Shown piece by piece: positions 535 to 64,000 of a DNA stretch of 64,000 nt (its first letter is position 1; each line of letters opens with the position of its first letter). Location of the stretch: positions 1 to 64,000 of IMG/VR virus record IMGVR_UViG_3300042302_000394. One strand, 5' to 3'. The translations under genes and the position numbers were made by a program. Under the pieces are notes generated by a model that was not told the origin of the DNA, did no database searches, and saw nothing but the letters and a program-made list of their open reading frames with translations.

Positions 535-897
535 TTATCCTAGATTGTATTTGTCTTTTTTAATATCTTCACGATAGTGATCGTATAGTCTCTTGCACAT
601 TTCTTCACGTAGGTCTTTGGGAAATACTTTGCCTAACTTGCCCTTCATTTCCTTGTACTCGTAATATTCTTTGCAACCTTTTTCCACCATGGGCATAAAC
701 AATTCCAGCACCATTTCTGGGCCACACTCTTTTAGAGTTTTAAGTTTTTTAGCAATAGGAAAGAAGTAGTCTTTGTGCAGTTTATCGTGGTCAACGATGT
801 ACCAGAAAAGATCATCGTCAAATTTTTCATCAGTTTGATCTTTTCTTTTGTTAGTGTTGAGGTCCATAGACCTACCGAAGAATTCTACTAGTTTCAT
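535..897 (-). CDS. Hypothetical late/virion protein
   Basis: 120-aa ORF; TAAATA 7 nt upstream of ATG. Confidence 0.6.
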   Translation of the reverse strand: MKLVEFFGRSMDLNTNKRKDQTDEKFDDDLFWYIVDHDKLHKDYFFPIAKKLKTLKECGPEMVLELFMPMVEKGCKEYYEYKEMKGKLGKVFPKDLREEMCKRLYDHYREDIKKDKYNLG

Positions 898-907
898 AAT
901 CTAATAT

Positions 908-1612
908 TTACCCTTTTAACTTGGCTAAACCCAAAAACTCTAGCCCTTTAATGTACATCCAACCTATGTCAAATTCCCACCACTTCTGACTAAACTTAGG
1001 ATTTGCGATATCTGCATGGTGATTATTGTGCAATTCCTCACCGCCGATCCATATGCCCCATGGCATTAAATTTTTACTCTTATCTTTAGTGTCAGTATTG
1101 CGATATCCCCACCAATGTGCTAGTCCGTTTATTACACCTGCTGCAAAAAAAGGTATCCACAACATCTGTACACCCCATACTAAGAATCCCCACCAACCAA
1201 ATAACAACACGTCTATAACCAACATTACGAGAATACCCAATCGGTGATGGGGTGTATAAAGTGTACGTTCAATCCAGTCTTTAGGAGTACCCATTCCGTA
1301 TTTCATAACCATGTCAGCATCACTGCCTGCTTGATTATAATACTTGACTCCTCTAAATACTAAATTCCAAATACCAAACACATGCGGACTGTGTGGATCA
1401 CCTTCTACGTCAGTATTTTGATGATGTTTACGATGTACTGCCACCCATTGTTTAGTGGTCATACCTGTAGTGAGCCATAACCAGAAACGCATAGCGTGTG
1501 CCAGTACTGGGTGAAATTCAACGCCTCTGTGACTTTGACTGCGATGTAGATATAGTGTAACACACATTATAGTAATGTGTGTAAACAGTAACGTTATTAA
1601 AATTAAATTCAT
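908..1612 (-). CDS. Delta-9-type membrane fatty acid desaturase
   Basis: Three His boxes (HRSQSH, HRKHH, HNNHH), DPHSP motif, hydrophobic helices, C-terminal WWEFDIGW. Confidence 0.92.
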   Translation of the reverse strand: MNLILITLLFTHITIMCVTLYLHRSQSHRGVEFHPVLAHAMRFWLWLTTGMTTKQWVAVHRKHHQNTDVEGDPHSPHVFGIWNLVFRGVKYYNQAGSDADMVMKYGMGTPKDWIERTLYTPHHRLGILVMLVIDVLLFGWWGFLVWGVQMLWIPFFAAGVINGLAHWWGYRNTDTKDKSKNLMPWGIWIGGEELHNNHHADIANPKFSQKWWEFDIGWMYIKGLEFLGLAKLKG

Positions 1613-1638
1613 AGTGTATTTACCCTATAAATATCATT
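1613..1638. promoter_or_regulatory. Back-to-back late promoters: TAAATA (minus, 1617-1622) and TATAAATA (plus, 1626-1633)
   Basis: 26-bp divergent intergenic gap; motifs lie 4 and 5 nt from the respective ATGs; TATAAATA matches the T4-type late consensus. Confidence 0.7.
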
Positions 1639-2091
1639 ATGAGTATCAGCGACGACCCGCAATATTGGATCAACTTACAGTGGCCAGCGGCTCCTAATCA
1701 AGACGATTATTCTGTATTTTCTAGCTATTGTATAGGTCGTGTTTTACTGTTAGGTAGCACTCGACTGCTGTTGCCCTTGTGTACAGAAGCGTGGGACGTA
1801 AATCCTGTATATGATGACCCTAAAATCCAGTCTAGGGATTGGTTTACACTAGACAAACACTGGGATACTATTATCGTAGACGGTGCGTTAGCATTTGGTA
1901 AAGATTACTGCGAGCAGTTGTTAAAAGCAGTATTGCCAAACTGTGATCGTTTTATTGCCCGTAGTTTCCTAAACCCTAACTGGCCCACTAAGTATGCTCA
2001 ATATTTTCCTAGAGCACACGAATTAACACCTGTTCCACAAGAACACCCCATCAACGAAGTTTATACATTTTACATATGGAACAACAAGTAA
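1639..2091 (+). CDS. Hypothetical protein, possible class I SAM-methyltransferase-like fold
   Basis: VLLLGS strand-loop, then EAWD and WDTIIVDG resembling Rossmann MTase motifs; overlaps the QueC-like gene. Confidence 0.45.
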   Translation: MSISDDPQYWINLQWPAAPNQDDYSVFSSYCIGRVLLLGSTRLLLPLCTEAWDVNPVYDDPKIQSRDWFTLDKHWDTIIVDGALAFGKDYCEQLLKAVLPNCDRFIARSFLNPNWPTKYAQYFPRAHELTPVPQEHPINEVYTFYIWNNK

Positions 2092-2666
2092 TATTAGCCA
2101 TGTACTCAGGCGGCCTGGACAGCCTAGGTATGATCTACAAACTGTTAACAGAACCCGAGTATAAACACTATGTTCTACACATACATCACATACACCATCA
2201 CAATGTAGAACATAGAGATCGTGCTGAAGCTGTAGTTGTTGACCGTGTGCTGAAAGAATTAGAAAGTATGGGCTATAGTTTTATCTTCAGTGAAAGTGAG
2301 ATAGGCTCACAGCCCTACAATGGGCAGTTCATGTATGACACAGACAGCATCAACTTCTTTGCTGGCTATATTTGCTCTGTTAATCCACGTATTGTACGAG
2401 TTGCTATGGGGATGCAGGCCAACGATCATAACCATAGTTTAGAGGAACGCAGAATACGTGCCAATGCTATACTGACAGCATTTACACCTGTGGAGAAAAT
2501 ATATCCTGTGTTAGATATGACCAAGCGTGAAATATACGATATGTTACCAGAAGGTTTGCGTAACATGTTTTGGTCGTGCCGGCGTCCAGTGTACAGTGAA
2601 AAAAATATCGCACCTTGTCTAAAGTGCGATACTTGTGTGAAACTGCGTGAGCAGGGTATACGTTAA
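2076..2666 (+). CDS. QueC-like PP-loop ATPase (7-cyano-7-deazaguanine synthase family)
   Basis: MYSGGLDS PP-loop; C-terminal WSC...PCLKCDTC Zn site; shorter and divergent relative to canonical QueC. Confidence 0.8.
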   Translation: MEQQVILAMYSGGLDSLGMIYKLLTEPEYKHYVLHIHHIHHHNVEHRDRAEAVVVDRVLKELESMGYSFIFSESEIGSQPYNGQFMYDTDSINFFAGYICSVNPRIVRVAMGMQANDHNHSLEERRIRANAILTAFTPVEKIYPVLDMTKREIYDMLPEGLRNMFWSCRRPVYSEKNIAPCLKCDTCVKLREQGIR

Positions 2667-2668
2667 AC

Positions 2669-5065
2669 TTATACTGCTGTAAATGTTTTAGTCAACGGAA
2701 CTAATGTAATCGCAGTTGATATTTTGTTAGTTGAACCATATTGGAATATTGGATCAGCATACAGTACTGTGTTTGTACCAGTACCGTTGATAGCACGATT
2801 TGAACCATCTCCAACAGGTATGTTGAATGTACACACACCAAACTGCATGGATGCTGAACCACTCATTGTAATACCGTGAGTATCGGACCCTGCTCCAGTG
2901 TTGTTAAGAATAACTTCACCCATACCCCATTGTACTGAACCACTTAGGGTAATAACAGAGCCAGTGTTGGCATCCAATGAACTTCTCAACATAGTTCCTA
3001 ATGAATCGTTTGCTTGGTTAAGTACTTGTCCTGTACCGTTAGTTTCAAGATTGTTTATACTACAAAAGCCACGTTGGATATCTATTAGATATACAGAGCC
3101 ACCGGCTCTAGCCATGGTACAATCATTCATTTCCACTCTGCTACCTGTGCCAGTGTTATCCGCATAAACACAACTCTTAGTGGCGTTGCCTTGATAGCAG
3201 TATACATCGTTTAGGTAAAGTTTTGCTGGATTAGATCCAGTTAACTCGATACTGTGATACGTATCGTCGGTGCGAACGGCAATATTAAATAGGCCAAATC
3301 TATTAACGTTTATAGCGTTTGTGCCGGTGTTTGCCGGAGTGATAGTAACATGTCCCTCAATCCAAATAGGTACATGGCCGGCATCGGGAGTTTCGCCACA
3401 GATAAAAATATTTCCACGAGTCAACGCCACATTCTCTGTGATAGAACTCTTTAGGAAAATAAACTGTGGGTTATCAACGATAGAACCGTTTATGTCAATT
3501 ACTAAACTAGTATCAGCAATCCTTGCTTCAATATAGGCCAATGCCGACGCGATATTTTTGAAAGGTTTGTGTAAACTGCCATCAGCGGTGTATGTGCCCG
3601 TATTAGTTGGGTCGACAATCCATTGACTATCCGCTGTGTCGATATATACACTAACGCCTTCACTGTCGAGGATATCGCCCGGTACTGTTAGAGTACCATC
3701 ATTGCCAAATTCCCAAGTATTGCCACCAAGAACATCACCATTGGTGTAGCCACCTGTGATTACCTGTACAACTCCAGACTGTGTGGTTTCTGTGTAAGCA
3801 CGGCCGCCTGTGATTCTAACATCGCCACCATAACTACTGCCTGCGGCATTCTCAACAGTTACATCGCCGCCGGTGATTTCCACAAATCCAGGATTGCCCG
3901 TGGTAGAAGTGTTAAAGTGAGCAACATTGCCCCCTTCAATCCTAACATAGCCACCTGTGTCGTTAAGGCCTTCGCCGCCGCGTAATTTAACATCGCCACC
4001 ACTGCCGCCACCTTGGCCCCATCCTTCAGTGTTGCCGTTGGTGTCACCTCCAACTCCGCCCCAAATGTAAACATCGCCGCCTTCACCTGTGGTGCTGGTT
4101 GAGCCGTAGCCACGCTGGCCTTGGATCACAATACGTTGAGCGTTGGTGTTGTTTTCTGTAGCTGTCGGTCCTGTGACGATAACTTGATTTTCGCTGTCGT
4201 TGCTTAACTGTAGTGTTGGACCACTAAGGGTGGTAGTAACATCGTAGCCCATATTAGATTTAGTTGGCAGAGTCAAGCCTTCCGGTAGTTCTAGACTGCC
4301 ATCAAATCTAAATGTCCATGTGTAGTCAGTTGACGTGGTCTCTGTAGTAATCTCAATTCCGCTATTGGCAGGCATGTCAGCTTGGTTTACAAGTGTTAAT
4401 TGAAATTCATTGCCTCCTGATATGTAAACATCGTCTGCGGCGTCTAACGTAATATCTCTTCCTGAACGAATAGTTATATCATCGTCGCCAGTGGCCATGC
4501 CAAAGTAACTGTTACTTTCACCAACACCGTTAACTATGTCCAACCCAATGGTGTTGATGTAGTTGTAATTAAAATCAATGTCATCTATTGTTATAGGCTC
4601 TGGGTGTGCTGTAGCCAGTGTTATGGTGTACAATGGTGGATTACCACTAGAGATTACATTGGTCACTGTTGATGCGAGATCATCAGTGTTGGGATTTATC
4701 ACTAGGTTGATGTTGCTGTAATTATAGGGAAAGGCAAGATTGCCATCAAAATACTCCACCCATCTTGACAACAGATCATCGAGATACAGTCCAATATTAT
4801 CTCCCATCTGTACAGCAATAGATCCAGTGGTATAGGCAAAAGTGTGTTCACTACCGTCGTTAAAATTATCTGAATAAGTTTTTTCTGCTGTTATTTTATT
4901 ACCAGTACCACCAATGGATTCTAATCCGCTCCATACCGTTGTGCCATCACCAACTCTCAGTTGATTATTAGTAGTGTCGTAGCCTGCTTCACCTAAGGCC
5001 AGTACCGGATCGTTAGTAGTCCAATTAGCGGCTGTATCTCTACGTAGTTTGATTCTTGTTGTCAT
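2669..5065 (-). CDS. Tail fibre/spike protein with Mtd-N-like N-terminus, Gly-rich shaft and probable beta-helix C-terminus
   Basis: IKLRRDTAANW...PVLALGEAGYDT...RVGDG; GG-D-V-x-I-x-GG repeats; DGSLHKPFKNIASAL motif. Confidence 0.75.
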   Translation of the reverse strand: MTTRIKLRRDTAANWTTNDPVLALGEAGYDTTNNQLRVGDGTTVWSGLESIGGTGNKITAEKTYSDNFNDGSEHTFAYTTGSIAVQMGDNIGLYLDDLLSRWVEYFDGNLAFPYNYSNINLVINPNTDDLASTVTNVISSGNPPLYTITLATAHPEPITIDDIDFNYNYINTIGLDIVNGVGESNSYFGMATGDDDITIRSGRDITLDAADDVYISGGNEFQLTLVNQADMPANSGIEITTETTSTDYTWTFRFDGSLELPEGLTLPTKSNMGYDVTTTLSGPTLQLSNDSENQVIVTGPTATENNTNAQRIVIQGQRGYGSTSTTGEGGDVYIWGGVGGDTNGNTEGWGQGGGSGGDVKLRGGEGLNDTGGYVRIEGGNVAHFNTSTTGNPGFVEITGGDVTVENAAGSSYGGDVRITGGRAYTETTQSGVVQVITGGYTNGDVLGGNTWEFGNDGTLTVPGDILDSEGVSVYIDTADSQWIVDPTNTGTYTADGSLHKPFKNIASALAYIEARIADTSLVIDINGSIVDNPQFIFLKSSITENVALTRGNIFICGETPDAGHVPIWIEGHVTITPANTGTNAINVNRFGLFNIAVRTDDTYHSIELTGSNPAKLYLNDVYCYQGNATKSCVYADNTGTGSRVEMNDCTMARAGGSVYLIDIQRGFCSINNLETNGTGQVLNQANDSLGTMLRSSLDANTGSVITLSGSVQWGMGEVILNNTGAGSDTHGITMSGSASMQFGVCTFNIPVGDGSNRAINGTGTNTVLYADPIFQYGSTNKISTAITLVPLTKTFTAV

Positions 5066-5078: not shown

Positions 5079-5285
5079 TTATGCTGTTCCACCATCTAAG
5101 GTGATGTCTGTTGCTGTAGTGTAGGTCCAGGCTGAATCGCCACCTTCTACATAGTATTTTGCTTGATTGTTGGTGATTGCCAGGCTAGACGACCAACGAT
5201 CGCCGGTCCATGTGTAGGTTACTGCGTTGGTAGCCACATAACTTTGGCCCACTGTGGGCGATGAGGGAAATGTTATTGCTGTCAT
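5079..5285 (-). CDS. Small virion/fibre-associated protein
   Basis: FPSSPTVGQSY...YTWTGDRW motif typical of phage fibre accessory domains; TAAATA 6 nt upstream. Confidence 0.6.
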   Translation of the reverse strand: MTAITFPSSPTVGQSYVATNAVTYTWTGDRWSSSLAITNNQAKYYVEGGDSAWTYTTATDITLDGGTA

Positions 5286-5302
5286 AATGTGTATTTACCC
5301 TA

Positions 5303-12657: not shown

Positions 12658-13092
12658 TTAATGATTAATTCTAATATTGTTTACAGTACCATCAGTCCAA
12701 TCACTTACTCTGGCTCTAATCCAGACATAGTTTCCGGTAAAATTATAACTCTTTATATTAGTAGTTGCAGTAGTGTATTCGACGCTTGAAATGTTTTCTT
12801 CGCTAATCAGTCCTGTTGTATCAATAGACATGTTGTTTGTGCCTAGCTCAACAGAAAACCAGTCAGTGGACTGCGGTGAGGACGCAAGCGACCCCTGCAT
12901 CTCTATCTTTCCGATAAACTCGTTTATATTGATTTGGACAGTGTGAAAACCGTCGCTACCCCCGAAGTAACCGTCACCTTTTATAGGATCGCTGGCATAA
13001 ATTAGGGCAGTTGTACCTGTATTAGGATAATCTAATACTACTGTACTGGATGAATTGACGTTGAACGTTAAACTTTGGCTTAGTGATGGCAT
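12658..13092 (-). CDS. Putative virion structural protein
   Basis: GDGYFGGSDGFHT...FTGNYVWIRA beta-rich protein; TAAATA 8 nt upstream. Confidence 0.55.
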   Translation of the reverse strand: MPSLSQSLTFNVNSSSTVVLDYPNTGTTALIYASDPIKGDGYFGGSDGFHTVQININEFIGKIEMQGSLASSPQSTDWFSVELGTNNMSIDTTGLISEENISSVEYTTATTNIKSYNFTGNYVWIRARVSDWTDGTVNNIRINH

Positions 13093-13126
13093 AGTAACAA
13101 TATTTATGCTACTATACCACTTTCAC

Positions 13127-13816: not shown

Positions 13817-16073
13817 CTGGAATCTTTGATTTAATGACTGGCATAACATCAACAATGTTAAGTTTTAGTTGTTCGTCTACTACATTAACTTCAACTACTC
13901 CGCCGTTTGTTAATTTACCAAAAAGAATTTCACGACTCATAGGTTTCTTAATGAATTCGTCAATAGTTCTTTGCAAAGGACGAGCACCCATTTTACTATT
14001 AAATCCTTTGGCAATTAAAAATTCAACTGCTTCGGCATTGGGTTTAACATGAATATTTTTGTCTTTAACTAATGCATTGAGCTCGTCAATAAATTTCTTA
14101 ACAACTTTGATCATTGTAACATGGTCTAACTTACCAAACTTAACAATACCATCTAAACGATTGCGGAATTCAGGCGCAAAGAATTTGTTAACAGCATCTT
14201 TAGGATCACTATCACGCTCTAGACTACCAAAGCCTACTGAATTCTTTTCAGCATCTGCGGAACCTAAGTTTGATGTCATAATGATAATAGCATTGCGACC
14301 ATCTGCCTTTTTGCCGTTACTACCGGTAATAAAACCATTGTCCATTAATTGTAGCATAACAGTTAGTACATCCGGGTGAGCCTTTTCGACTTCGTCTAAT
14401 AAAAGAACACAGTTAGGTGTTTCTTGTAAGCATGTAATCAACTGTCCTGCATTTTCATCAAATCCTACGTATCCAGGCGGCGCTCCAATAAATTTAGCAA
14501 CACTATGTTTTTCCTGAAATTCACTCATATCAAATCGTACAAGTTTAATTCCCATACCAGTGGCGAGCTGTTTAGCAGCTTCAGTCTTTCCTACGCCAGT
14601 AGGACCTACAAACAAGAAACTACCGACCGGCTTATTAAATGGTTTTAATCCTGCTTGGGCAATAAAAATCTTATCTAACAGGCTAGTGATAGCATTTTCT
14701 TGACCGAAAACCTTGTTACGTAGGCCTTTTTCCAGACTTGCAAGATTAACACCTTCTTTTGAGCTAACCTGTTCAATTGGAAGATTAGCCAGTCTTGCAA
14801 CTTCAAAAACAATCTCGTCATGATCAACAACTCCGTTTTCTTCGTCCTTAACTTTAAATCGAGCACATGCACAATCAATTAAGTCTAGCGCCTTATCTGG
14901 AAGCTTCTTGTCAGTCATGTACTTAACAGAGTAGGTTACTGCATCAGTAATGGCTTGATTGGTAATCTTAACACCGTGGTGTTTTTCGTAATACTTCTTA
15001 ACACCTTTTAGGATCTTAATAGTAACTGCTTCACTAGGCTCGTCAATAGTAACACGCTGGAATCGACGCATTAGGGCGCGATCTTTTTCAAAGTGCTTGC
15101 GATATTCTTCCCAGGTAGTACTGGCGATAACTTTTAGTGTACCTTTTGTCAGCATAGGCTTGAGCATATTTGCCATGTCGTTACTGTTACCATTTGCAGC
15201 GCCTGCCCCGTTCATCATATGTGCTTCATCGATAAACAGAATACAATTTTTCTTCTTTTCTAACGCACTGATAATAGCTTTAAGACGTTCTTCAAAATCA
15301 CCACGATACTTACTACCGGCAAGCATAGAACTAATGTCCATACTATAAACAGTGTGATCTTGAATAAATGTAGGAACAGTACCTTCAATGATTTTTTTAG
15401 CCAAGCCTTCTGCAATAGCAGTTTTACCTACACCGGGATCACCGATTAAAATAACGTTACTTTTGTTTCTTCGAGCAAGTACTAGTTGAACTTCTTCGAT
15501 TTCTTTTTCACGACCGATAACTGGATCAATTTTCTTTGATTTTGCTTTTGCAGTTAGATTGGTGCAGAACTGACTAATCATCCTTTCAAGTTGGAGATTA
15601 GATCGTGTGCTACCTGCAGAACTCTCCTCATTGTCTTCTTTGCTATATTCTTTTTGGATAAAATTTAGGAATTTATCTTTATCGATATTTGCTTTTTTAA
15701 TAAAGTGCGTGGCATAGCTTTTCTTTTCAGCAAACATGCTGATAAAACAATCAACTGGTTCAATAACATTTCTACCAGTAAACAACACCTGAGTAAACGC
15801 TCGATTTAAAACGCGATCAACTGTATTTGTTTTTTTAGGACGATCGACGCTTGGGTTAACAATTTCCTTTAAATCTTCTGATATATATTTTTCTAAGTCT
15901 GTAATTAAACTTTTAACGTCAGCACCAAAGCTACCGAGGAGTTTTGCAAATTCTTCGTTAGTAACTAGCCCGTGCAAGAAGTGTTCAAGAGTAACATACT
16001 CGTGTTCGTGTTCGTTGGCTAGACTCACGGCTGATTCGAAAATCTGCTCAAGATCTTTATTTGGTTGTAGCAT
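13782..16073 (-). CDS. clpA: ATP-dependent Clp protease ATPase subunit ClpA
   Basis: Clp-N domain (HEYVTLEH), two AAA+ modules (GDPGVGKT, GPTGVGKT), GSKYRG and GYVG pore loops, VGF ClpP-docking loop, no ClpB M-domain. Confidence 0.93.
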   Translation of the reverse strand: MLQPNKDLEQIFESAVSLANEHEHEYVTLEHFLHGLVTNEEFAKLLGSFGADVKSLITDLEKYISEDLKEIVNPSVDRPKKTNTVDRVLNRAFTQVLFTGRNVIEPVDCFISMFAEKKSYATHFIKKANIDKDKFLNFIQKEYSKEDNEESSAGSTRSNLQLERMISQFCTNLTAKAKSKKIDPVIGREKEIEEVQLVLARRNKSNVILIGDPGVGKTAIAEGLAKKIIEGTVPTFIQDHTVYSMDISSMLAGSKYRGDFEERLKAIISALEKKKNCILFIDEAHMMNGAGAANGNSNDMANMLKPMLTKGTLKVIASTTWEEYRKHFEKDRALMRRFQRVTIDEPSEAVTIKILKGVKKYYEKHHGVKITNQAITDAVTYSVKYMTDKKLPDKALDLIDCACARFKVKDEENGVVDHDEIVFEVARLANLPIEQVSSKEGVNLASLEKGLRNKVFGQENAITSLLDKIFIAQAGLKPFNKPVGSFLFVGPTGVGKTEAAKQLATGMGIKLVRFDMSEFQEKHSVAKFIGAPPGYVGFDENAGQLITCLQETPNCVLLLDEVEKAHPDVLTVMLQLMDNGFITGSNGKKADGRNAIIIMTSNLGSADAEKNSVGFGSLERDSDPKDAVNKFFAPEFRNRLDGIVKFGKLDHVTMIKVVKKFIDELNALVKDKNIHVKPNAEAVEFLIAKGFNSKMGARPLQRTIDEFIKKPMSREILFGKLTNGGVVEVNVVDEQLKLNIVDVMPVIKSKIPDENTDTETELQ

Positions 16074-16566
16074 TAATTTTTTCCTTTTTAGCTTTCTTTG
16101 CGGCCATTGTCCATTTTAATGGACTGGTCCTATCTTGATAAGTAATACCTTCTAAATGATCGAACTCATGTAAAAAGCACTTACAGTTGTATCCGTCGAA
16201 CTCACCTTCTTCCCATTCTCCGGAACTGTTTTGCCAACGTGCTTTAATAGCTGTTGGTCTTTTAATTTTAACATAAATTCCAGGGAAACTCAAACATCCT
16301 TCCTCCAAATCTTCTGTTTCATTTGTATTTGCAATGATAATGGGATTAAAAAATGCCATGCCTGCATCTGGACTTTCTCGATGTCCCATAACAAATACTC
16401 TAGCTGTTAGACCTAATTGATTTGCAGCAAGACCTATGCCATCTTGTGCGTACATAAATTCGAGCATCTGCCTTTCGAGTTCTTTTGGATTTAATATCGG
16501 ATTATTAAAATCAAAGTCTGGCATTCTTTCTCTAAGAATTGGGTTTGGAAATTTTACTATGTTCAT
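16057..16566 (-). CDS. def: Peptide deformylase
   Basis: GIGLAANQ, EGCLS and HEFDH motifs. Confidence 0.96.
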   Translation of the reverse strand: MNIVKFPNPILRERMPDFDFNNPILNPKELERQMLEFMYAQDGIGLAANQLGLTARVFVMGHRESPDAGMAFFNPIIIANTNETEDLEEGCLSFPGIYVKIKRPTAIKARWQNSSGEWEEGEFDGYNCKCFLHEFDHLEGITYQDRTSPLKWTMAAKKAKKEKINATTK

Positions 16567-16574
16567 AATAATAT

Positions 16575-17399
16575 TTAAGAAACTATTTGACGTATAAGAT
16601 CTTTTTGTTGATCAGTAAGGTTTGTGGGTGTTTTTAAATTAATAGTTATCAGTAATCTACCCCGCATTCGATTATCTTGCATAAATGGCATACCGTATCC
16701 CTGCACACTCATTATTTGTCCGTGTTGTGTACCCGGGGGAATGTTTATTTCTAATGTTTTATTATCTAATGTAGTAAATTGTTTCAAACACCCAATAATT
16801 GCTTCTAAAGAATTTACATCTAACGTTCTTACTAAATCGTCATTGTTTCGTTGAAAGACTGCATGTGGTATGACATGAATAGTTAAATGAATATCACCTC
16901 TAGGTACACCACTAATACTGTCATCACCCATTTCTGATAGTCTTAGTGTAGTTCCATCCCTAACACCTGCTGGAATTTTTACTTCAAGTAATTGTTCTCT
17001 ACCGGATGGTAGTTGTATATTGGCGATCAATTCTTTTCCACTAAATGCTTCCTCTAGCGTTATTTGAGTTTGAAGATTCATTATCCTGTTGCGAACAGGT
17101 TGCTGTCTACGCTGTCCAAATATATCACCAAATGGGCCGCCCCCAAACCCCCGTAGGATATCTTCAAACCCCGGAGGCATTCCTCCGTACTGTTGAAATC
17201 CACCCTGTGGCTGCGGATTATCATATTGTGCTTTTTTATCTACATCCCCTAACGTGTCGTATGCTACTGATATTTCTTGAAACTTGGCAGTGTCTCCTCC
17301 ACGATCCGGATGGTGTTTGGCTGCAAGTTTACGATATGCTTTCTTGATATCGTCTTGCGATGCCGAACGATCAACGCCTAAAATATTGTAATAATCCAT
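16575..17399 (-). CDS. DnaJ/CbpA-type (class B) co-chaperone
   Basis: J-domain with HPD, G/F linker, C-terminal domain, no Zn finger. Confidence 0.93.
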   Translation of the reverse strand: MDYYNILGVDRSASQDDIKKAYRKLAAKHHPDRGGDTAKFQEISVAYDTLGDVDKKAQYDNPQPQGGFQQYGGMPPGFEDILRGFGGGPFGDIFGQRRQQPVRNRIMNLQTQITLEEAFSGKELIANIQLPSGREQLLEVKIPAGVRDGTTLRLSEMGDDSISGVPRGDIHLTIHVIPHAVFQRNNDDLVRTLDVNSLEAIIGCLKQFTTLDNKTLEINIPPGTQHGQIMSVQGYGMPFMQDNRMRGRLLITINLKTPTNLTDQQKDLIRQIVS

Positions 17400-24983: not shown

Positions 24984-25218
24984 CTTTAAGATAACTTATA
25001 ATTTTTTTCTGTTCTTGTTCATTGAGCCACTCTGCTTCAGTGCTTCCAAAGTTGGGACACATTTTCATCATGTCGTCTAAGAACCATTTTAACTGATATA
25101 GATCCTGTTTAACACCCCAAGCAATGAATCCGTCGTTGCGAGCGTTAGAGCATTCTGAAACTGCTGCTCTAACCTGTTGGAATGTTTCTATAATATTGTA
25201 TGAATGTTTGTGGCCCAT
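24970..25218 (-). CDS. Hypothetical protein (likely leaderless start MGHKHS at 25218)
   Basis: ATG 6 nt after a -10 box; the ORF-track extension runs through a terminator. Confidence 0.6.
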   Translation of the reverse strand: MGHKHSYNIIETFQQVRAAVSECSNARNDGFIAWGVKQDLYQLKWFLDDMMKMCPNFGSTEAEWLNEQEQKKIISYLKDDIQ

Positions 25219-25224: not shown

Positions 25225-25260
25225 AGTATAGAGGTAAAAAAAGGGCCCGTCAAGACCCTT
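25225..25260 (-). terminator. Intrinsic terminator whose loop is the -35 box of the next promoter
   Basis: AAGGGTC-TTGACG-GGCCCTT-TTTTT; TTGACG, 17 nt, TATACT (25225-30). Confidence 0.75.
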
Positions 25261-26462: not shown

Positions 26463-26492
26463 ATTATACGCACCTACTGCATACAATGTCAA
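26463..26492 (-). promoter_or_regulatory. Sigma70-type promoter; -35 contains the upstream stop codon
   Basis: TTGACA, 18 nt, TATAAT, 6 nt, ATG. Confidence 0.7.
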
Positions 26493-27396: not shown

Positions 27397-27433
27397 GATT
27401 CAACTCCAGTGATGCTATATTTATAGACAAAAC

Positions 27434-30400: not shown

Positions 30401-30483
30401 GTGTAGTATCAGTACCCGATTTAATATGTTATTTATTATCTTTCAATAACAATAACATTGCGGTTGTTTGCTATTAAATCCTC

Positions 30484-32031: not shown

Positions 32032-32062
32032 GTTTGTATTCTTTCCGTATTATCAATATTTA

Positions 32063-35861: not shown

Positions 35862-35869
35862 AGTATATT

Positions 35870-36805
35870 TTACACGATTGTACGGAAATAGTCAATGGTT
35901 CTAACAAGTCCTTGTTCCAAATTGATTTTAGGTTCCCAATCGAGCATAGACTTTGCTACTGAAATATCCGGACGACGTTGCTTTGGATCGTCTTGAGGCA
36001 AAGGCATTTGAAGGATTTGGCTCTTGCTTCCGGTAAGTTCAATAACTTTATGTGCTAATTCCCACATGGTAAACTCTCCTGGATTGCCAGTATTGACAGG
36101 CCCGATAAAATTATCGTCGGTGTGGTTCATCATTGCCTGCATAGCATCCAAAAGATCATCAACATAGCAGAAACTACGAGTTTGCATACCATCACCGTAG
36201 ATAGTAATGTCTTTGCCTTGTAGTGCTTGAACGATGAAATTACTAACTACTCTGCCATCATTTTGAGCCATTCTTGGGCCATAAGTGTTGAAAATACGAA
36301 CAATTTTGGCCTTAACATCGTGAGTACGGTAGTAGTCCATAAACAGTGTTTCTGCGGCACGTTTACCCTCATCGTAGCAACTACGGATACCAATTGGATT
36401 TACATTGCCCCAATATGATTCCGGTTGTGGATGTACAGTTGGGTCACCGTAGCATTCACTGGTACTTGCCTGTAGAATCTTAGCACCAGTACGTTTGGCC
36501 AAACCTAGCATATTGTAGGCACCTAGCACACTGGTTTTCATTGTTTGGATAGGATCCCATTGATAATAATATGGACTTGCAGGGCAAGCCAAATTATAAA
36601 TCTCATCAACTTCTACATATAATGGAAAGCAAACATCTTGTCGGATGACTTCAAAATTCTTGTTATCTAATAAATGAGCAATATTGTTTTTGCTACCTGT
36701 AAAATAATTGTCCACACAAAGAACATGGTGTCCTTCGTTGACAAGCCGATCACATAAATGTGAACCTAAAAATCCTGCGCCGCCTGTTACTAATACTTTT
36801 TTCAT
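35870..36805 (-). CDS. UDP-glucuronate decarboxylase (UDP-xylose synthase)-like SDR
   Basis: [45 protein letters not shown]. Confidence 0.92.
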
Positions 36806-45586: not shown

Positions 45587-45826
45587 TTAACCTCTAATGG
45601 TTATTTGTGTTTTATTTACAACGGGACCGTCGCTAACGAAGTCTAATCCAGCCATCTTGCCTTCATAAACTTTACCGTTCCATCTCATTGGCATCTTGAT
45701 GCTTTTATTTAATACAACAGTTAGCCGATCTTTATCTTTAAATTCATAGACGGTAGCATCCACTAACTTACTAGTATTTGCCTGCCGCACTTTACATGTT
45801 TCACTATGCCTAATTATATCTGCCAT
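45587..45826 (-). CDS. Hypothetical protein
   Basis: ATG 6 nt after TATAAT. Confidence 0.6.
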   Translation of the reverse strand: MADIIRHSETCKVRQANTSKLVDATVYEFKDKDRLTVVLNKSIKMPMRWNGKVYEGKMAGLDFVSDGPVVNKTQITIRG

Positions 45827-45832: not shown

Positions 45833-45861
45833 ATTATATAGTAGATTGTACCAAAAGTCAA
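45833..45861 (-). promoter_or_regulatory. Sigma70-type promoter; -35 contains the upstream stop
   Basis: TTGACT, 17 nt, TATAAT, 6 nt, ATG. Confidence 0.72.
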
Positions 45862-47067: not shown

Positions 47068-47361
47068 TTATTTAACTTGTCCCCAACGAAGATAAAACTC
47101 GGATAACTTCTTTGCTTCAAGTTCCGCCATAATAATATACCTATATCCCATCCACATTGAATCCATATGTCTATGCCATTCTGGTTTATCTACAGCGTGT
47201 TTGAATACAAACTGCCCTGCTTCACTACGTTCCCAATCAAACATAGGCCCAGCAGCATATATGTCAGGATCGTCGACATCGGCAAGATTAAACTTATGCA
47301 CAACAACCTTGTGAATCTTTTTCACAACATCGCCTTCTACAGTATATCTTACTGAGCCCAT
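47068..47361 (-). CDS. Hypothetical protein (FxLRW family)
   Basis: DVDDPDIYAA...EFYLRWG. Confidence 0.6.
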   Translation of the reverse strand: MGSVRYTVEGDVVKKIHKVVVHKFNLADVDDPDIYAAGPMFDWERSEAGQFVFKHAVDKPEWHRHMDSMWMGYRYIIMAELEAKKLSEFYLRWGQVK

Positions 47362-50610: not shown

Positions 50611-50627
50611 AATATATGTATTTAATG

Positions 50628-50855
50628 TCATTCACTGAGCCCCATAAAAATAAGTTCACGCTCTGTAACATTGGCAACAGGTTTGAGCCAACCGTGACGA
50701 ATACATTCATTGATAATCATCTTGTATTCTTTTGGACAACTTTGATTGATCTCAAATCCTGCTCGAGGTGCCTGCATCAATCCGTCGTAGATTACGAATT
50801 TAGGATCGCTCTGTTTGAGAGTGCGTATTTGACTTTTGTATAGAGTGTATGTCAT
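50628..50855 (-). CDS. Hypothetical protein
   Basis: ATG 6 nt after TATACT. Confidence 0.6.
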   Translation of the reverse strand: MTYTLYKSQIRTLKQSDPKFVIYDGLMQAPRAGFEINQSCPKEYKMIINECIRHGWLKPVANVTERELIFMGLSE

Positions 50856-50861
50856 ACTGCT

Positions 50862-50890
50862 AGTATAGCAGTATTAACATTGCATGTCAA
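50862..50890 (-). promoter_or_regulatory. Sigma70-type promoter; -35 contains the upstream stop; inverted repeat over -10 and start codon
   Basis: TTGACA, 17 nt, TATACT, 6 nt, ATG; ATACTGCTA/TAGCAGTAT (50854-74). Confidence 0.72.
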
Positions 50891-51621: not shown

Positions 51622-51641
51622 GTTTCCACCTTGTAATATAT

Positions 51642-52175
51642 TTAGTTATCACTTACACTTTCATTATGTGCTACTTTAATGACGCTAAGACCACTCTTCT
51701 CTAAAAATTCTACGCCCGCCATGTCCCTATAACTATTGCGATAGTATACGCTAGATATGCCGCTTTGGTATATAAGTTTGGCACAATCCAAACAAGGAGC
51801 GTGAGTAATAAAAATATCAGCATCACGGCCGCTTTGGCTCGACTTGGCCAGCTTCGCAATCGCATTGGATTCAGCATGTAATACCTCTGGTTTAGTTTTT
51901 AATCCGTAACGAACATTTCGTTGAGCACCTTCGTGCCATCCTTCGTGCGGGTACTTAGCATCGAACTCCTCTGGGTCAAGCCAACCACCTGCACCCGAAT
52001 CCCAAACTTTATCTTCACAGTCATTATCCCAGCCCGCAGGCATTCCGTTGTAGCCGTAGCTAATAACTGAACCATCTTTAACAATAACCGCACCTACCTG
52101 AAGTCTAATGGCGTGGCTAAGTTCAGCAGCTCTTAAAGCCCAATCCATATACATGTCTATGTATTTTTCTTTCAT
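51642..52175 (-). CDS. dCMP deaminase (ComEB family)
   Basis: VGAVIV, GYNG, HAESNA, PCLDC. Confidence 0.92.
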   Translation of the reverse strand: MKEKYIDMYMDWALRAAELSHAIRLQVGAVIVKDGSVISYGYNGMPAGWDNDCEDKVWDSGAGGWLDPEEFDAKYPHEGWHEGAQRNVRYGLKTKPEVLHAESNAIAKLAKSSQSGRDADIFITHAPCLDCAKLIYQSGISSVYYRNSYRDMAGVEFLEKSGLSVIKVAHNESVSDN

Positions 52176-55434: not shown

Positions 55435-55613
55435 TGTGTACTATTTAATCGATCAATCTCATCGGCTGCTTCTTCTAACAAATCTGCAATACGGTCTGGC
55501 GTGCCTTCCTGTACTGATTTACGGTCTTTGATCTGTCTGCGAATCTCTGCTCGCTTGCGTAGGCGGAATATAAGACTCTGTTCACTTACTGGTAAATGAC
55601 TTTCGTCTTTCAT
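55431..55613 (-). CDS. Small hypothetical protein
   Basis: RLRKRAEIRRQI...DRIADLLEEAADEI. Confidence 0.6.
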   Translation of the reverse strand: MKDESHLPVSEQSLIFRLRKRAEIRRQIKDRKSVQEGTPDRIADLLEEAADEIDRLNSTQ

Positions 55614-58125: not shown

Positions 58126-58126
58126 T

Positions 58127-60342: not shown

Positions 60343-60381
60343 ATTATACAAGAAAAAACCAACCCTGTCAAGAGTTGGTTT
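60343..60381 (-). terminator. Terminator whose loop is the -35 box of the rIIA promoter
   Basis: AAACCAACTC-TTGACA-GGGTTGGTTT-TTT; TTGACA, 17 nt, TATAAT (60343-48). Confidence 0.78.
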
Positions 60382-60388
60382 GTCCAAA

Positions 60389-60798: not shown

Positions 60799-60799
60799 A

Positions 60800-61626: not shown

Positions 61627-61652
61627 GCTGCTCTCCTTGTTAATAAGTATAT

Positions 61653-61681
61653 ATTATAGCATGGATTTACCATGCTGTCAA
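61653..61681 (-). promoter_or_regulatory. Sigma70-type promoter with inverted repeat in spacer; -35 contains the upstream stop
   Basis: TTGACA, 17 nt, TATAAT; AGCATGG-N5-CCATGCT. Confidence 0.78.
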
Positions 61682-61908
61682 CCGGAAGTTTTAACCACTT
61701 CCAGGATGGTAATTTCTACTACTAAATGCTTACGCAGTAGCATGAACTTTTTGAACTTGGCTTCTATGTCCGCCTGAATGTACTCGTCATGGTAAGGCAT
61801 AGTAGCAACGTCCTCATAGGGTTCATCGTTTTCGTTTAACGCTATGAAACTGAGCTTCACTGTGCCCTGTTCGGGCTCTTTGAACATTTTAACAAATTTG
61901 TTGAACAT
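61678..61908 (-). CDS. Hypothetical protein
   Basis: TAAATA 5 nt upstream. Confidence 0.55.
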   Translation of the reverse strand: MFNKFVKMFKEPEQGTVKLSFIALNENDEPYEDVATMPYHDEYIQADIEAKFKKFMLLRKHLVVEITILEVVKTSG

Positions 61909-61916
61909 GCAAATAT

Positions 61917-62462
61917 TTAGTGATGCCCTTTAATTTCGTTATCTTTAATCATACGAACTGCCCGATCCATGGAGATTACAATTTCCCCAGTTGAGTCCAT
62001 ACCCACATCCATGCAACGATATTTTTCCATGCCTGTAGTGCCACCGTGCAAGTGACCGTGAAAGTGCAGAGAACCACGATGCATCTGATCCCATTCATAG
62101 ATAGGATAGTGAAACATCACGCACTTGTGGCCATCATAGGTGATATCCAAATACTTATGTACTTCAACAAATGCATCGCGGAATGTTACATCCATTAGGG
62201 TCTTGCGGTCATGGTTGCCTTCTACAAGGATCTTATCTCCGTTCAACCGATTCATCATTCGTCCAGCATCACTTCCTGACATAAACGCTACATCGCCTAA
62301 GATGTAGACTAAATCACCCGGCTCTACTTTGTCGTTCCATTCTTCCGCCATTGCGTTATTCATATAAGCAACATCGTCACGAAATCGTGCCCGTGTTTGC
62401 GGACAGAACTTCATAATGTTCTTGTGCCCGAAATGGAGATCCGAAGTAATCCAAGTTTTCAT
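61917..62462 (-). CDS. Calcineurin-like metallophosphoesterase
   Basis: SDLHFGH, LGD, GNHD, HYP, HGHLH, DVG. Confidence 0.9.
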   Translation of the reverse strand: MKTWITSDLHFGHKNIMKFCPQTRARFRDDVAYMNNAMAEEWNDKVEPGDLVYILGDVAFMSGSDAGRMMNRLNGDKILVEGNHDRKTLMDVTFRDAFVEVHKYLDITYDGHKCVMFHYPIYEWDQMHRGSLHFHGHLHGGTTGMEKYRCMDVGMDSTGEIVISMDRAVRMIKDNEIKGHH

Positions 62463-62472
62463 ATTATTTCCT

Positions 62473-62501
62473 ATTATACAGCCAGTGACCTATACCGTCA
62501 A
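62473..62501 (-). promoter_or_regulatory. Sigma70-type promoter; -35 contains the upstream stop
   Basis: TTGACG, 17 nt, TATAAT; overlapped by a GCCAGT(T)GAC/GTCACTGGC repeat. Confidence 0.7.
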
Positions 62502-62962
62502 CTGGCATACCAAATTTCTTTAAACCCTTCTTCCTCAGTGGGCTCTTCCCAACTGGCAATCATGCTGGCAATAACATGATCCGGAATCTCTTTGCCAGGG
62601 CGGCTCATCAATCGGCGCATAAGTTCTTTGTGTTCAGGTGTCTTAAACACTATTGCAATATGCTCATAGTCAGGTAACATGTTAAACTTGCGAGTACGAC
62701 TTGCAAGAGTAGTACTAGTTTGATCCCAGATAATATCTCGATTCATTTCACGAGCCGCAACAACTTCCTTGGCCATAAGGTCTACAGCAGTGGGCATAAA
62801 GTCTACAAACACTTCGCTGTAGGTGCGTCCTACTTCCTTTGCGTAGATTTCAACCCACTTGTCTGTGCTAATACAAGAGCAGGTCAACGCCCAGTCTTGT
62901 TCAGCCACCCAAGTACTTTTACCTGAACCAGGCACTCCAATCAATTGATAACATTTTGCCAT
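62498..62962 (-). CDS. P-loop kinase (polynucleotide-kinase-like, AAA_33)
   Basis: GVPGSGKST, ISTD, WDQTS, RxxxR lid. Confidence 0.82.
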   Translation of the reverse strand: MAKCYQLIGVPGSGKSTWVAEQDWALTCSCISTDKWVEIYAKEVGRTYSEVFVDFMPTAVDLMAKEVVAAREMNRDIIWDQTSTTLASRTRKFNMLPDYEHIAIVFKTPEHKELMRRLMSRPGKEIPDHVIASMIASWEEPTEEEGFKEIWYAS

Positions 62963-63430
62963 TTAATCTACACTCCTAAAAGTTCGCCAATCGTCTATGT
63001 TTGGCTTTTCATCTTCATCATATGTCCAACCCAAAGCCTTCATCATGCGATGCTTGACCAATAGGTTGGGGCTACGGAATCTACCTGTGTCTTCAAAGCC
63101 CATCATAACACCAACTTCGCAAACTGCACCACTGCGGCAAATACCCGCATAGCAGTGAACAACTACATTCATACGGTTGTCCTTTGCGTGTTGCAACAGT
63201 CGAACAAGCTCGTTAGCCTGCTCTTGACTACATTTCATTGCTTCTTCCAACACTTCGTCCTTGGCCTCTACGTCCAAAAACTCAAAGTTGTGTTGCTCTT
63301 TAAACTTGTGAGCAGGCACAGGGCGCCAGCTGGCCGGATCAACAATGCTGATCAGCATACTGTTCTCACCTGCCTCATGATGAAACCTTGTGGGTATATC
63401 AGCGGCCGCTACGTTTTCAATCCATGGCAT
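62963..63430 (-). CDS. Cys-based phosphatase (PTP/DSP-like, CX5R)
   Basis: VHCYAGICRSGAV. Confidence 0.85.
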   Translation of the reverse strand: MPWIENVAAADIPTRFHHEAGENSMLISIVDPASWRPVPAHKFKEQHNFEFLDVEAKDEVLEEAMKCSQEQANELVRLLQHAKDNRMNVVVHCYAGICRSGAVCEVGVMMGFEDTGRFRSPNLLVKHRMMKALGWTYDEDEKPNIDDWRTFRSVD

Positions 63431-63453
63431 TTTATTCTCCTGCGCATTATATA

Positions 63454-63482
63454 ATTATAGCATCACTTTACCATTTTGTCAA
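63454..63482 (-). promoter_or_regulatory. Sigma70-type promoter, back-to-back with a plus-strand TAAATA (63488-93)
   Basis: TTGACA, 17 nt, TATAAT. Confidence 0.72.
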
Positions 63483-63498
63483 GCCAGTAAATAATGTT

Positions 63499-63711
63499 AT
63501 GTCCACCCAAAAAACTCGCCTAGAAAAAAAAGCTGACGATATATTTGAGTTGCTGGATCATTATGTTTATCCCACAACGGGCGAAACACTGGCAGCTCAA
63601 AAGGGTTTGATGGTAGGCTGGTTAGCTAGACTGGCAACTACTGACTGGACAGTTGCAGAAGAATTAGAAAGACGATTACATCTTGCTCGGAAACAAAAAG
63701 GTAAAATTTGA
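63499..63711 (+). CDS. Hypothetical late protein (start MSTQK at 63499)
   Basis: TAAATA, 5 nt, ATG. Confidence 0.5.
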   Translation: MSTQKTRLEKKADDIFELLDHYVYPTTGETLAAQKGLMVGWLARLATTDWTVAEELERRLHLARKQKGKI

Positions 63712-63747
63712 ATTTTATACCCTCTAATTTTAGAAATAAATATAATT

Positions 63748-64000
63748 ATGAGATGTTTCTATAAATTAAAAATTAATAATCTAGAATCTATACAGGCACA
63801 CGCATTATCTAAAATATCTGAAGAAGATCTTAATTTGATGCCAACTAGATTATTTTATCCAGAATATAATTTTTTAGATGATCAAGATCTCTTATGTGCG
63901 TTAAATCAATACGGGTTGACAAATTATATACATAATGTTGCTCTTTTTGTTCTCAATTCAGGAGGCATAAGCCCTATTCATGTCGACGGGGATAATGACT
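63748..64000 (+). CDS. Partial hypothetical protein (possible 2OG-oxygenase/cupin: PIHVD)
   Basis: TAAATA, 5 nt, ATG; open to the window end. Confidence 0.45.
   Translation, partial: MRCFYKLKINNLESIQAHALSKISEEDLNLMPTRLFYPEYNFLDDQDLLCALNQYGLTNYIHNVALFVLNSGGISPIHVDGDND

What the first reader, a model, noticed from the sequence alone, without database searches (positions are those of the whole stretch)
895..63750. Pervasive leaderless architecture: TAAATA-N4-8-ATG and TATAAT/TATACT-N6-ATG, often with the upstream TAA as part of the late promoter
Seen: TAAATA lies 4-8 nt before the ATG, with no room for an SD, at starts 897, 1612, 1639, 5285, 13092, 16566, 50610, 55434, 61908, 63499 and 63748. 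Sigma70 -10 boxes lie exactly 6 nt before ATG at 25218, 26456, 45826 and 50855. At 908, 16575, 51642 and 61917 the upstream gene's TAA stop is the first half of TAAATA. Known: T4-type late promoters are a lone TATAAATA box with initiation a few nt downstream. Inference: many mRNAs start at or next to AUG, so the phage would rely heavily on leaderless (70S) initiation, possibly insulating translation from anti-SD-targeting host defences.
Basis: partly seen in the sequence, partly recalled or inferred. Interest (0 to 1): 0.62.

Follow-up and report, generated by a model that had tools for sequence, protein, structure and literature searches.

The report
Zero-leader promoters in a jumbo phage
In this uncultured jumbo phage, about one gene in eight has a promoter box placed so that transcription should begin on the A of the ATG, which predicts mRNAs with no ribosome-binding leader; four cultured phages with the same type of late sigma factor do not show this.

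Summary

- **The genome.** The window is the first 64 kb of a 207.8-kb viral contig, about 58% of a jumbo phage.
- **The TAAATA signal.** TAAATA is the rarest of its 15 permutations (172 copies). Yet 29 copies lie 4-8 nt before the first ATG of an ORF, against 1.8 expected (mode N5, P~5e-25).
- **The sigma70 signal.** At least 14 such promoters occur on the contig.
- **Geometry.** Both arrangements put +1 on the A, because T4's box spans -13 to -6.
- **Supporting evidence.**
  - Only 1 of 30 such starts has an SD-like element.
  - The base before the ATG is a pyrimidine in 87% and 79% of cases, against 48% in SD-led genes.
  - There is a gap at N9-12.
  - A complete 383-kb relative replicates the pattern.
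  - Orthologues keep the box.
- **Late sigma.** Relatives encode a gp55-family late sigma. It lies outside this fragment.
- **Controls.** T4, PA5oct, CBB and RaK2 show 0-1 such sites.

The architecture covers roughly 11-13% of genes, so it is not pervasive; most genes are SD-led. The anti-SD-defence idea is untested. I classify it as a new variant of a known kind.

The parts
905..910 (-). Late-type box TAAATA, N7 before ATG 897 (ORF 535-897, 120 aa). Its TAA is the stop codon of ORF 908-1612.
1617..1622 (-). Late-type box, N4 before ATG 1612 (ORF 908-1612, 234 aa). Lies in a 26-bp divergent intergenic region.
   Evidence: About 80 orthologous loci share the same ATG. Most keep TAAATA or TAAGTA at N4 while the flanks diverge.
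1628..1633 (+). Late-type box (full TATAAATA at 1626-1633), N5 before ATG 1639 (ORF 1639-2091, 150 aa). Sits back-to-back with the box at 1617-1622.
   Evidence: Both boxes are conserved in 4 diverged relatives.
5292..5297 (-). Late-type box, N6 before ATG 5285 (ORF 5079-5285, 68 aa).
   Evidence: In G001 the orthologue keeps the box at N20 with AGGA in the leader.
13101..13106 (-). Late-type box, N8 before ATG 13092 (ORF 12658-13092, 144 aa, resembles a virion structural protein).
16572..16577 (-). Late-type box, N5 before ATG 16566 (ORF 16057-16566, peptide deformylase). Its TAA is the stop codon of ORF 16575-17399.
   Evidence: The protein aligns to bacterial deformylases from residue 1, so the start is correct.
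47069..47074 (-). Late-type box, N5 before ATG 47063 (258 codons, peptidase-like).
55442..55447 (-). Late-type box, N7 before ATG 55434 (57 aa ORF).
61914..61919 (-). Late-type box, N5 before ATG 61908 (ORF 61678-61908, 76 aa). Its TAA is the stop codon of ORF 61917-62462.
63737..63742 (+). Late-type box, N5 before ATG 63748 (ORF 63748-64299 of the contig, 183 aa).
50619..50624 (-). TAAATA at N8 before ATG 50610. Doubtful, because the ATG is internal and the ORF opens at ATG 50631.
63488..63493 (+). TAAATA at N5 before ATG 63499. Doubtful, because the ATG is internal to a weak plus-strand ORF.
26463..26492 (-). Complete sigma70 promoter TTGACA-18-TATAAT (12 of 12), N6 before ATG 26456 (172 codons).
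25225..25253 (-). Sigma70 promoter TTGACG-17-TATACT, N6 before ATG 25218 (82 codons). A terminator-like hairpin at 25241-25260 overlaps the -35.
35867..35895 (-). Sigma70 promoter TTGACT-17-TAAAAT, N5 before ATG 35861 (55 aa).
45833..45861 (-). Sigma70 promoter TTGACT-17-TATAAT, N6 before ATG 45826 (ORF 45587-45826, 79 aa).
50862..50890 (-). Sigma70 promoter TTGACA-17-TATACT with TG extension, N6 before ATG 50855 (75 aa). A 9-bp inverted repeat spans the -10 box to the start site.
51639..51644 (-). Leadered example of the same box: N17 before ATG 51621, with AAGGTGG in the leader. Its TAA is the stop codon of ORF 51642-52175.
30430..30435 (-). Leadered box, N29 before the 988-aa tail-fibre gene (ATG 30400). 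Similar boxes lie at 32057-32062 (N25, 515-aa tail fibre) and 27418-27423 (N21, with GGAG).

Best explanation
The phage has two promoter classes. One is a host-sigma70 class (TTGACA-17-TATAAT), presumably early. The other has a lone (G)ATAAATA box and is presumably read by a phage gp55-family late sigma. In about one gene in eight, either kind of promoter abuts the ORF so closely that RNA polymerase should initiate on, or within 1-3 nt of, the A of the ATG. The spacing is TATAAT-N6-ATG or TAAATA-N4/5-ATG. The resulting mRNA has no leader and no SD, so it would have to be translated by the leaderless route, in which a 70S ribosome or 30S subunit with fMet-tRNA binds a 5'-terminal AUG. The other promoters of both classes sit 13-40 nt upstream and supply a minimal leader with an SD.

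**Shown:** the motif statistics, the geometry, the lack of SD, the conservation, and the presence of the sigma in relatives.

**Inferred:** the start sites, the sigma-box pairing, the temporal classes and the mode of translation.

**Likely consequence (inferred):** ORFs without an SD are translatable mainly from their own promoter's transcript. That would tie translation to the promoter class.
For: - **Enrichment.** 29 observed against 1.8 expected at N4-8, mode N5. TAAATA is the rarest permutation.
- **Replication.** A complete 383-kb relative with median 55% protein identity has 28 observed against 1.8 expected, plus a second hump at 18-24 nt.
- **Geometry.** T4's box starts at -13 (PMC2988020), so five bases separate the box from +1. 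The sigma70 -10 ends at -7, so N6 puts the A at +1.
- **Full sigma70 promoters.** Among promoters matching at least 11 of 12 positions with an ORF start within 120 nt, 10 of 35 here and 11 of 56 in the relative are at N5-7, and only 1 and 0 at N8-14. The scanner ranks them top.
- **SD content.** Only 1 of 30 N4-8 starts has an SD-like element, against 18 of 31 at N13-40.
- **Start-site preference.** A pyrimidine precedes the ATG in 46 of 53 and 22 of 28 cases, against 122 of 255 in SD-led genes (p=1e-7 and 0.002). This is the known Y(-1)R(+1) preference of RNA polymerase.
- **Same element in both classes.** Zero-leader and leadered boxes share flanks (A at -1, G at -2, no G downstream) that other copies lack.
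- **Position relative to genes.** 35% of boxes lie within 40 nt upstream of a co-oriented start, against 8% for controls.
- **Divergent neighbours.** Eight zero-leader genes face divergent neighbours across gaps as small as 18-32 bp. One is a 26-bp spacer made of two back-to-back boxes that is conserved in relatives.
- **Orthologues.** They keep the box but move it between N4-8 and N19-20 with an SD.
- **Late sigma.** Relatives encode a late sigma (phrog_12791 E 7e-77, phrog_234 E 3e-24) behind a sigma70 promoter.
- **Start codons.** ATG in 34 of 35.
Against: - There are no transcript 5' ends.
- The sigma gene is not on this contig. Synteny places it in the missing arc.
- The start-site distance for this divergent sigma, which has an N-terminal extension of about 140 aa, is assumed from T4. 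The relative's mode is N4 rather than N5, which requires some flexibility.
- No T4-type clamp was detected.
- The host is unknown, so its capacity for leaderless translation is unknown.
- Seven sites lie 8-10 nt after an upstream stop codon, where reinitiation could also operate.
Confidence: 0.75

Rival explanations
1. TAAATA close to the ATG is a translation signal, not a promoter. It would be an A/U-rich, S1-type or other non-SD ribosome-binding element on leadered polycistronic mRNAs.
For: The box replaces the SD at these genes. In some orthologues of 908-1612 an SD-like GGAG or GGGA stands where others have the box.
Against: - The same extended box occurs 13-34 nt upstream and is followed by a real SD.
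- Complete sigma70 promoters show the same zero-leader spike, and no translation signal explains that.
- The pyrimidine at -1 fits a transcription start.
- Divergent pairs with 18-32 bp spacers have no upstream co-directional mRNA.
- The lineage encodes a gp55-type sigma.
- CBB and GAP32 have the same box as a predicted late promoter (PMC5259590).
Confidence: 0.07
2. The boxes are promoters, but the adjacent ORFs are translated mainly by termination-reinitiation coupling from the upstream gene. On this view the zero-leader spacing is a by-product of genome compaction.
For: In 7 of 25 sites the upstream TAA stop is the first half of the box, only 8-10 nt before the ATG.
Against: - 18 of 25 sites are divergent or have gaps over 15 nt.
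- Compaction would not produce a sharp mode at N4-5, a gap at N9-12, or the same spike for sigma70 promoters.
- The equally compact genomes of CBB, RaK2, PA5oct and T4 lack the pattern.
Confidence: 0.08
3. The pattern is an artefact. It would arise from AT-rich sequence plus mis-assigned start codons, with the true starts lying downstream behind an SD.
For: Gene calls here are heuristic.
Against: - Composition-matched permutations give 1.8 expected against 29 observed.
- Orthologue alignments begin at residue 1 and diverge upstream.
- The deformylase aligns from residue 1 to bacterial homologues.
- Four AT-richer control phages show nothing.
Confidence: 0.03
4. The boxes bind some other factor or mark RNA-processing sites, and transcription starts elsewhere.
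For: There is no direct transcription evidence. A palindrome overlaps the promoter at 50855.
Against: The box matches the known gp55 promoter core and the sigma is present in the lineage. The sigma70 sites have canonical -35, spacer and -10 elements.
Confidence: 0.05

Closest known systems
T4 late transcription (gp55 sigma with the TATAAATA box at -13 to -6, no -35)
   Same: The core box is the same (TAAATA, often ATAAATA). There is no -35. The box is the rarest permutation in the genome. Relatives encode a gp55-homologous sigma. Boxes precede tail-fibre and structural genes.
   Different: In T4, 0 of 225 TAAATA copies lie at N4-8. T4 boxes sit 13-34 nt (most at 23-29) before starts, with SD leaders. 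Here about half of the gene-proximal boxes abut the ATG. The sigma is about 90 aa longer than gp55. No gp45-type clamp was detected. Position -2 prefers G, not T.
RaK2, CBB, GAP32 and PA5oct 'hairy' jumbo phages
   Same: They share the late-sigma family phrog_12791. CBB and GAP32 have a predicted late motif ATAAATA and lack gp33 and gp45 (PMC5259590). They also have many tail fibres, rIIA/rIIB and large tRNA sets.
   Different: CBB, RaK2 and PA5oct have 0-1 boxes at N4-8 and 0-1 strong sigma70 promoters at N5-7. Protein identity to this phage is low (rIIA 28%).
Thermus phages phiYS40 and Lalka27a (experimentally leaderless middle and late mRNAs)
   Same: Many phage transcripts begin at the A or G of the start codon from -10-type promoters. 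In phiYS40, IF2 goes up and IF3 goes down (PMC3594737; bioRxiv 10.64898/2026.04.20.719267).
   Different: They belong to a different phage lineage, promoter type and sigma strategy. Their host phylum is one where ~40% of genes are leaderless (PMC3160421). Here the promoter is gp55-type, only ~12% of genes are affected, and the host is unknown.
Leaderless ('TA-led') genes of Actinobacteria and Deinococcus-Thermus
   Same: The in-silico signature is the same: a -10-like box about 10-12 bp before the start codon, no SD, and an AUG start (PMC3160421).
   Different: Those are cellular genomes using the housekeeping sigma. Here two sigma classes converge on the same geometry in a virus.

Membership tests
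T4-type late transcription system | A gp55-family late sigma is encoded | tested here: met
   Not on this contig. Present in three relatives (phrog_234 E~1e-25; phrog_12791 E 7e-77). Synteny shows the gene lies in the arc missing from this fragment. The feature is therefore met for the lineage and inferred for this phage.
T4-type late transcription system | A lone TATAAATA-like box without a -35, upstream of late or structural genes | tested here: met
   The (G)ATAAATA signature is shared by 131 gene-proximal boxes in two genomes and is absent from other copies. Boxes precede tail-fibre genes. The exact 8-mer occurs only 15 times.
T4-type late transcription system | A gp45 sliding clamp acts as activator | tested here: not met
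   No phrog_223 match in the contig or in the complete 383-kb relative. CBB also lacks it (PMC5259590).
T4-type late transcription system | A gp33 co-activator | not tested
   It is a small, poorly conserved protein and was not searched.
T4-type late transcription system | Initiation occurs six nucleotides after the box | not testable with these tools
Leaderless mRNA genes | A -10-type promoter element ends 5-7 nt (sigma70) or about 5 nt (gp55 type) before the start codon | tested here: met
Leaderless mRNA genes | No SD upstream of the start | tested here: met
   1 of 30 has an SD-like element, against 18 of 31 for boxes at N13-40.
Leaderless mRNA genes | AUG start codon | tested here: met
   24 ATG and 1 GTG in the TAAATA class; 10 of 10 ATG in the sigma70 class.
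Leaderless mRNA genes | The primary transcript's 5' end maps at or within a few nt of the start codon | not testable with these tools
   No RNA data. The only indirect support is the pyrimidine at -1.
RaK2/CBB/PA5oct-like jumbo phages | A phrog_12791 late sigma together with the ATAAATA late motif | tested here: met
   Relatedness is distant.

The most novel reading that the evidence does not exclude
A widespread clade of uncultured environmental jumbo phages has moved both its host-sigma70 promoters and its gp55-type late promoters onto the start codons of about an eighth of its genes. These ORFs lack an SD, so they would be translated only from their own leaderless transcript. That would couple translation to promoter class as a gating device. 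It would be analogous in effect to T4's hairpin-sequestered ribosome-binding sites. It may also reveal a mesophilic host, or a phage-modified ribosome, with unusually high leaderless capacity.
Probability: 0.3. Interest if true: 0.7.

Novelty: new variant of a known kind. Interest (0 to 1): 0.6.

Why it matters
Leaderless phage mRNAs are documented on a large scale mainly in Thermus phages.

- **What would be new.** This would be the first case in which gp55/TATAAATA-type late promoters are fused to start codons. T4, RaK2, CBB and PA5oct do not show it, and neither phiKZ nor AR9 has such transcripts.
- **Consequences if true.**
  - It affects gene calling and start prediction in huge-phage metagenomes, because tools that depend on an SD will mis-start these genes.
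  - It gives a sequence-only marker of host translation biology for an uncultured phage clade with hundreds of related contigs.
  - It offers compact natural promoter-start cassettes, 26-35 bp long, for testing how 70S initiation is used during infection.

Tried and rejected
- **Close DNA matches.** Megablast of 6 kb against the phage collection found nothing.
- **gp55 and gp45 in this contig.** Searches by protein and by profile were negative. The gp55 absence is explained by the fragment boundary. It is not evidence that the sigma is absent.
- **Host inference.** The phage peptide deformylase gave only 31-38% identity to scattered lineages, which is uninformative. ORF GC outliers gave no lead.
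- **Initiator tRNA.** One tRNA-Met(CAT) has an unpaired 1:72 end but lacks the anticodon-stem G:C triplet, so the result is inconclusive.
- **TAAGTA as a general variant box.** It is present in some orthologues of 908-1612 but is not enriched genome-wide in the relative.
- **TAAATA read by sigma70 as a -10.** I considered and rejected this. It lacks T at -7, or in the shifted register A at -11. This rests on established knowledge of the -10 element, not on a test.
- **Stop-codon artefact.** Rejected, because TAA-initial control hexamers are not enriched.
- **Two family-scan calls** failed on syntax or frame and were corrected.
Full report
**What the window is**

The window is bases 1-64000 of a single 207,813-bp IMG/VR viral contig. 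The contig is linear and about 58% complete by CheckV. GC is 41.6% and most genes are on the minus strand. It encodes:
- rIIA and rIIB
- a Clp-like ATPase
- several long tail fibres and a 2206-aa protein
- a peptide deformylase
- outside the window, ribonucleotide reductase, NAMPT, many more fibres and 40 tRNA genes

It has no close DNA relative among deposited phages. Its rIIA is 28% identical to that of PA5oct-like Pseudomonas jumbo phages. More than 200 environmental viral contigs carry a 75-100% identical homologue of the 234-aa protein 908-1612. Among them are a complete 383-kb genome (G001) and contigs of 300 kb and 199 kb.

**Checking the observation**

Two of the eleven TAAATA starts, 50610 and 63499, are internal ATGs of doubtful ORFs.

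The four cases where the stop TAA forms the first half of the box are real. Contig-wide there are seven. The box at 51642 is 17 nt from its ATG with AAGGTGG between them, so that gene is leadered.

**Is it more than chance?**

I counted, for TAAATA and its 14 permutations, the distance to the first ATG of any ORF of at least 60 codons, on both strands of the whole contig.
- TAAATA is the rarest permutation, with 172 copies.
- 29 copies lie at N4-8, distributed as 4, 13, 4, 3 and 5 for N4 to N8.
- The 12 unshifted controls give a pooled rate that predicts 1.8. Poisson P is about 5e-25.
- Controls that begin with TAA are flat, so stop codons are not the cause.
- TATAAT has 8 copies at exactly N6 against about 0.5 expected, and TATACT has 3 against about 0.15. 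None of the 19 and 59 control permutations reaches those counts at any single distance from 3 to 12.

**Replication and controls**

| Genome | TAAATA copies | At N4-8 (observed / expected) | Where gene-proximal boxes sit |
|---|---|---|---|
| This contig (G000) | 172 | 29 / 1.8 | N4-8 peak (mode N5), the rest scattered at 13-34 nt |
| G001 (383 kb) | 285 | 28 / 1.8 | N4-8 and a hump at 18-24 nt |
| T4 | 225 | 0 / 1.0 | TATAAATA at 13-34 nt, most at 23-29 |
| PA5oct | 611 | 1 / 2.5 | 20-34 nt |
| CBB | 168 | 0 / 0.6 | 20-34 nt |
| RaK2 | 306 | 1 / 1.6 | 20-34 nt |

G001 shares 153 of 317 ORF products with this contig at a median 55% identity. Its second hump leaves just enough room for a short leader with an SD. 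None of the four cultured phages has a TATAAT spike. The zero-leader geometry is therefore specific to this environmental clade.

**What the boxes are**

- They are the top-ranked hits of the independent scanner, at 10-12 of 12 positions.
- Among promoters matching at least 11 of 12 positions with an ORF start within 120 nt, 10 of 35 here and 11 of 56 in G001 are at N5-7. Only 1 and 0 are at N8-14, and the rest are at 15 nt or more.
- The four cultured phages have 0-1 at N5-7.

*The TAAATA class.*
- Boxes at N4-8 and boxes at N13-34 share flanking preferences that the other 318 copies lack. At -1, A is found in 51% and 62% against 13%. At -2, G is found in 32% and 42% against 10%. G is avoided just downstream.
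- The two distance classes are therefore one element, roughly (G)ATAAATA.
- 35% of copies here, and 29% in G001, lie within 40 nt upstream of a co-oriented start. Controls give 8% and 6%.
- The motif equals the ATAAATA late motif predicted for CBB and GAP32 and resembles T4's TATAAATA (PMC5259590).

*The sigma.*
- The three large relatives each encode a 274-291-aa protein that matches phrog_12791, 'sigma factor for late transcription', at E 7e-77. Its C-terminal half matches gp55 (phrog_234) at E 3e-24.
- The same family is present in PA5oct, CBB, RaK2 and GAP32.
- This contig lacks the gene. Synteny shows the contig covers only the G001 arc from about 273 kb through 383/0 kb to 97 kb, and the sigma lies at 180 kb.
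- In G001 the sigma gene sits behind its own TTGACA-17-TATAAT promoter with an AGGA leader. That fits a cascade from host sigma70 to a phage late sigma.
- No T4-type clamp was found.

**Why this means leaderless mRNAs (inference)**

- *Box positions.* Geiduschek and Kassavetis number the first base of the T4 box as -13 (PMC2988020). The 8-bp box therefore spans -13 to -6, and five bases separate it from +1. TAAATA-N5-ATG puts the A at +1. For sigma70 the -10 hexamer spans -12 to -7, so N6 does the same. This is established knowledge.
- *Modes.* The observed modes are N5 here, N4-5 in G001 and N6 for sigma70.
- *SD content.* Only 1 of 30 N4-8 starts has an SD-like element, against 18 of 31 at N13-40.
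- *Start-site preference.* The base before the ATG is a pyrimidine in 87% of TAAATA zero-leader starts and 79% of sigma70 zero-leader starts, against 48% of SD-led starts (p=1e-7 and 0.002). This matches the known Y(-1)R(+1) preference of RNA polymerase.
- *Gap at N9-12.* A leader of that length is too long to be leaderless and too short to hold an SD. The gap appears in both genomes.
- *Start codons.* 34 of 35 are ATG.
- *Divergent neighbours.* Eight zero-leader genes face divergent neighbours. The 26-bp spacer between 1612 and 1639 consists of two back-to-back boxes, and four diverged relatives keep both. There is no room there for any leader.
- *Start codons are correctly placed.* Orthologues of 908-1612 in 80 loci share the ATG while the upstream sequence diverges completely. 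The deformylase aligns to bacterial homologues from residue 1.
- *Box movement between orthologues.* Between this contig and G001, orthologues keep the box but move it. 173635 goes N4 to N6, 107807 stays at N7, and 146960 goes N8 to N4. 173056 and 5285 go to N19-20 with an SD-like GGA/AGGA in the leader.

**Extent**

On my heuristic list of 317 ORFs:
- 25 have TAAATA at N4-8
- 10 have a full sigma70 promoter at N5-7
- 116 have SD-like elements
- the rest are unresolved, and many of those are spurious or mis-started

The architecture therefore covers roughly 11-13% of genes. It is common but not pervasive.

Zero-leader late-type genes include a 563-aa tail fibre, a protein resembling a virion structural protein, the deformylase and many small unknowns. 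Zero-leader sigma70 genes are mostly small ORFs. They include a tandem array at 198-207 kb, and also a 1122-aa protein.

**Comparison with what is known**

- Leaderless phage mRNAs are classical for single genes. On a large scale they are documented for Thermus phages phiYS40 and Lalka27a.
- The criterion that a -10-like box about 10-12 bp before the start codon marks a leaderless gene is established (PMC3160421).
- dRNA-seq found no leaderless transcript in phiKZ. AR9 5' UTRs are 26-491 nt.
- The late box and sigma are known predictions for RaK2-like phages.
- What is new is the zero-leader placement of gp55-type promoters as well as sigma70 promoters, in a mesophilic environmental jumbo-phage clade.
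- I therefore rate it a new variant of a known kind.

**Limits**

- There is no RNA evidence.
- The host is unknown.
- The sigma-box pairing and the temporal classes are inferred.
- A more economical idea is that ORFs without an SD are translated only from their own promoter's transcript. It is equally untested.

Noticed in passing
window 16057-16566 (-): A phage-encoded peptide deformylase (phrog_2890, E 3e-37). It is one of the TAAATA-N5 genes. Together with 40 tRNAs it suggests investment in translation initiation and elongation.
   Followed up: partly
contig 83.0-92.4 kb and 207.1 kb (L002/L003, L009): 40 tRNA genes. The tRNA-Met(CAT) at 83677-83750 has an unpaired A1/A72 end and an initiator-like T-loop but lacks the three G:C pairs of the anticodon stem. 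It may be an initiator; the evidence is inconclusive.
   Followed up: partly
window ~50854-50874 (-): A perfect 9-bp inverted repeat with a 3-nt spacer covers the -10 box TATACT and runs into the first two letters of ATG 50855. It looks like an operator on a zero-leader promoter.
   Followed up: no
window 25241-25260 (-): A terminator-like hairpin with a T-run overlaps the -35 of the promoter for ATG 25218, making a very compact terminator-promoter-start module.
   Followed up: no
contig 198-207 kb (L008:14000-20000, L009): A tandem array of small plus-strand ORFs. Each has a near-identical cassette: ttggTTGAC, 17 bp, TATAAT, acacac, ATG. It looks like an early host-takeover region built from repeated zero-leader promoter units.
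   Followed up: partly
L099:1447-2271 (-) in the 383-kb relative: The late sigma (274 aa) carries an N-terminal extension of about 140 aa relative to T4 gp55. It lies next to an SbcD-like nuclease gene. No gp45-type clamp is present in that complete genome.
   Followed up: partly
L010-L089, upstream of orthologues of window 908-1612: Some relatives carry TAAGTA instead of TAAATA at the same N4 position, often about 5 nt after a TGTCAAC motif. Others have an SD-like GGAG or GGGA and no box. The initiation mode flips within one orthologue family.
   Followed up: partly
window 6010 (-) and 18103 (-): There are -10-like boxes without a -35 at zero-leader distance: TAAAATA at N5-6 before ATG 6010, and TATAAT at N5 before ATG 18103. 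These may be further members of either class.
   Followed up: no
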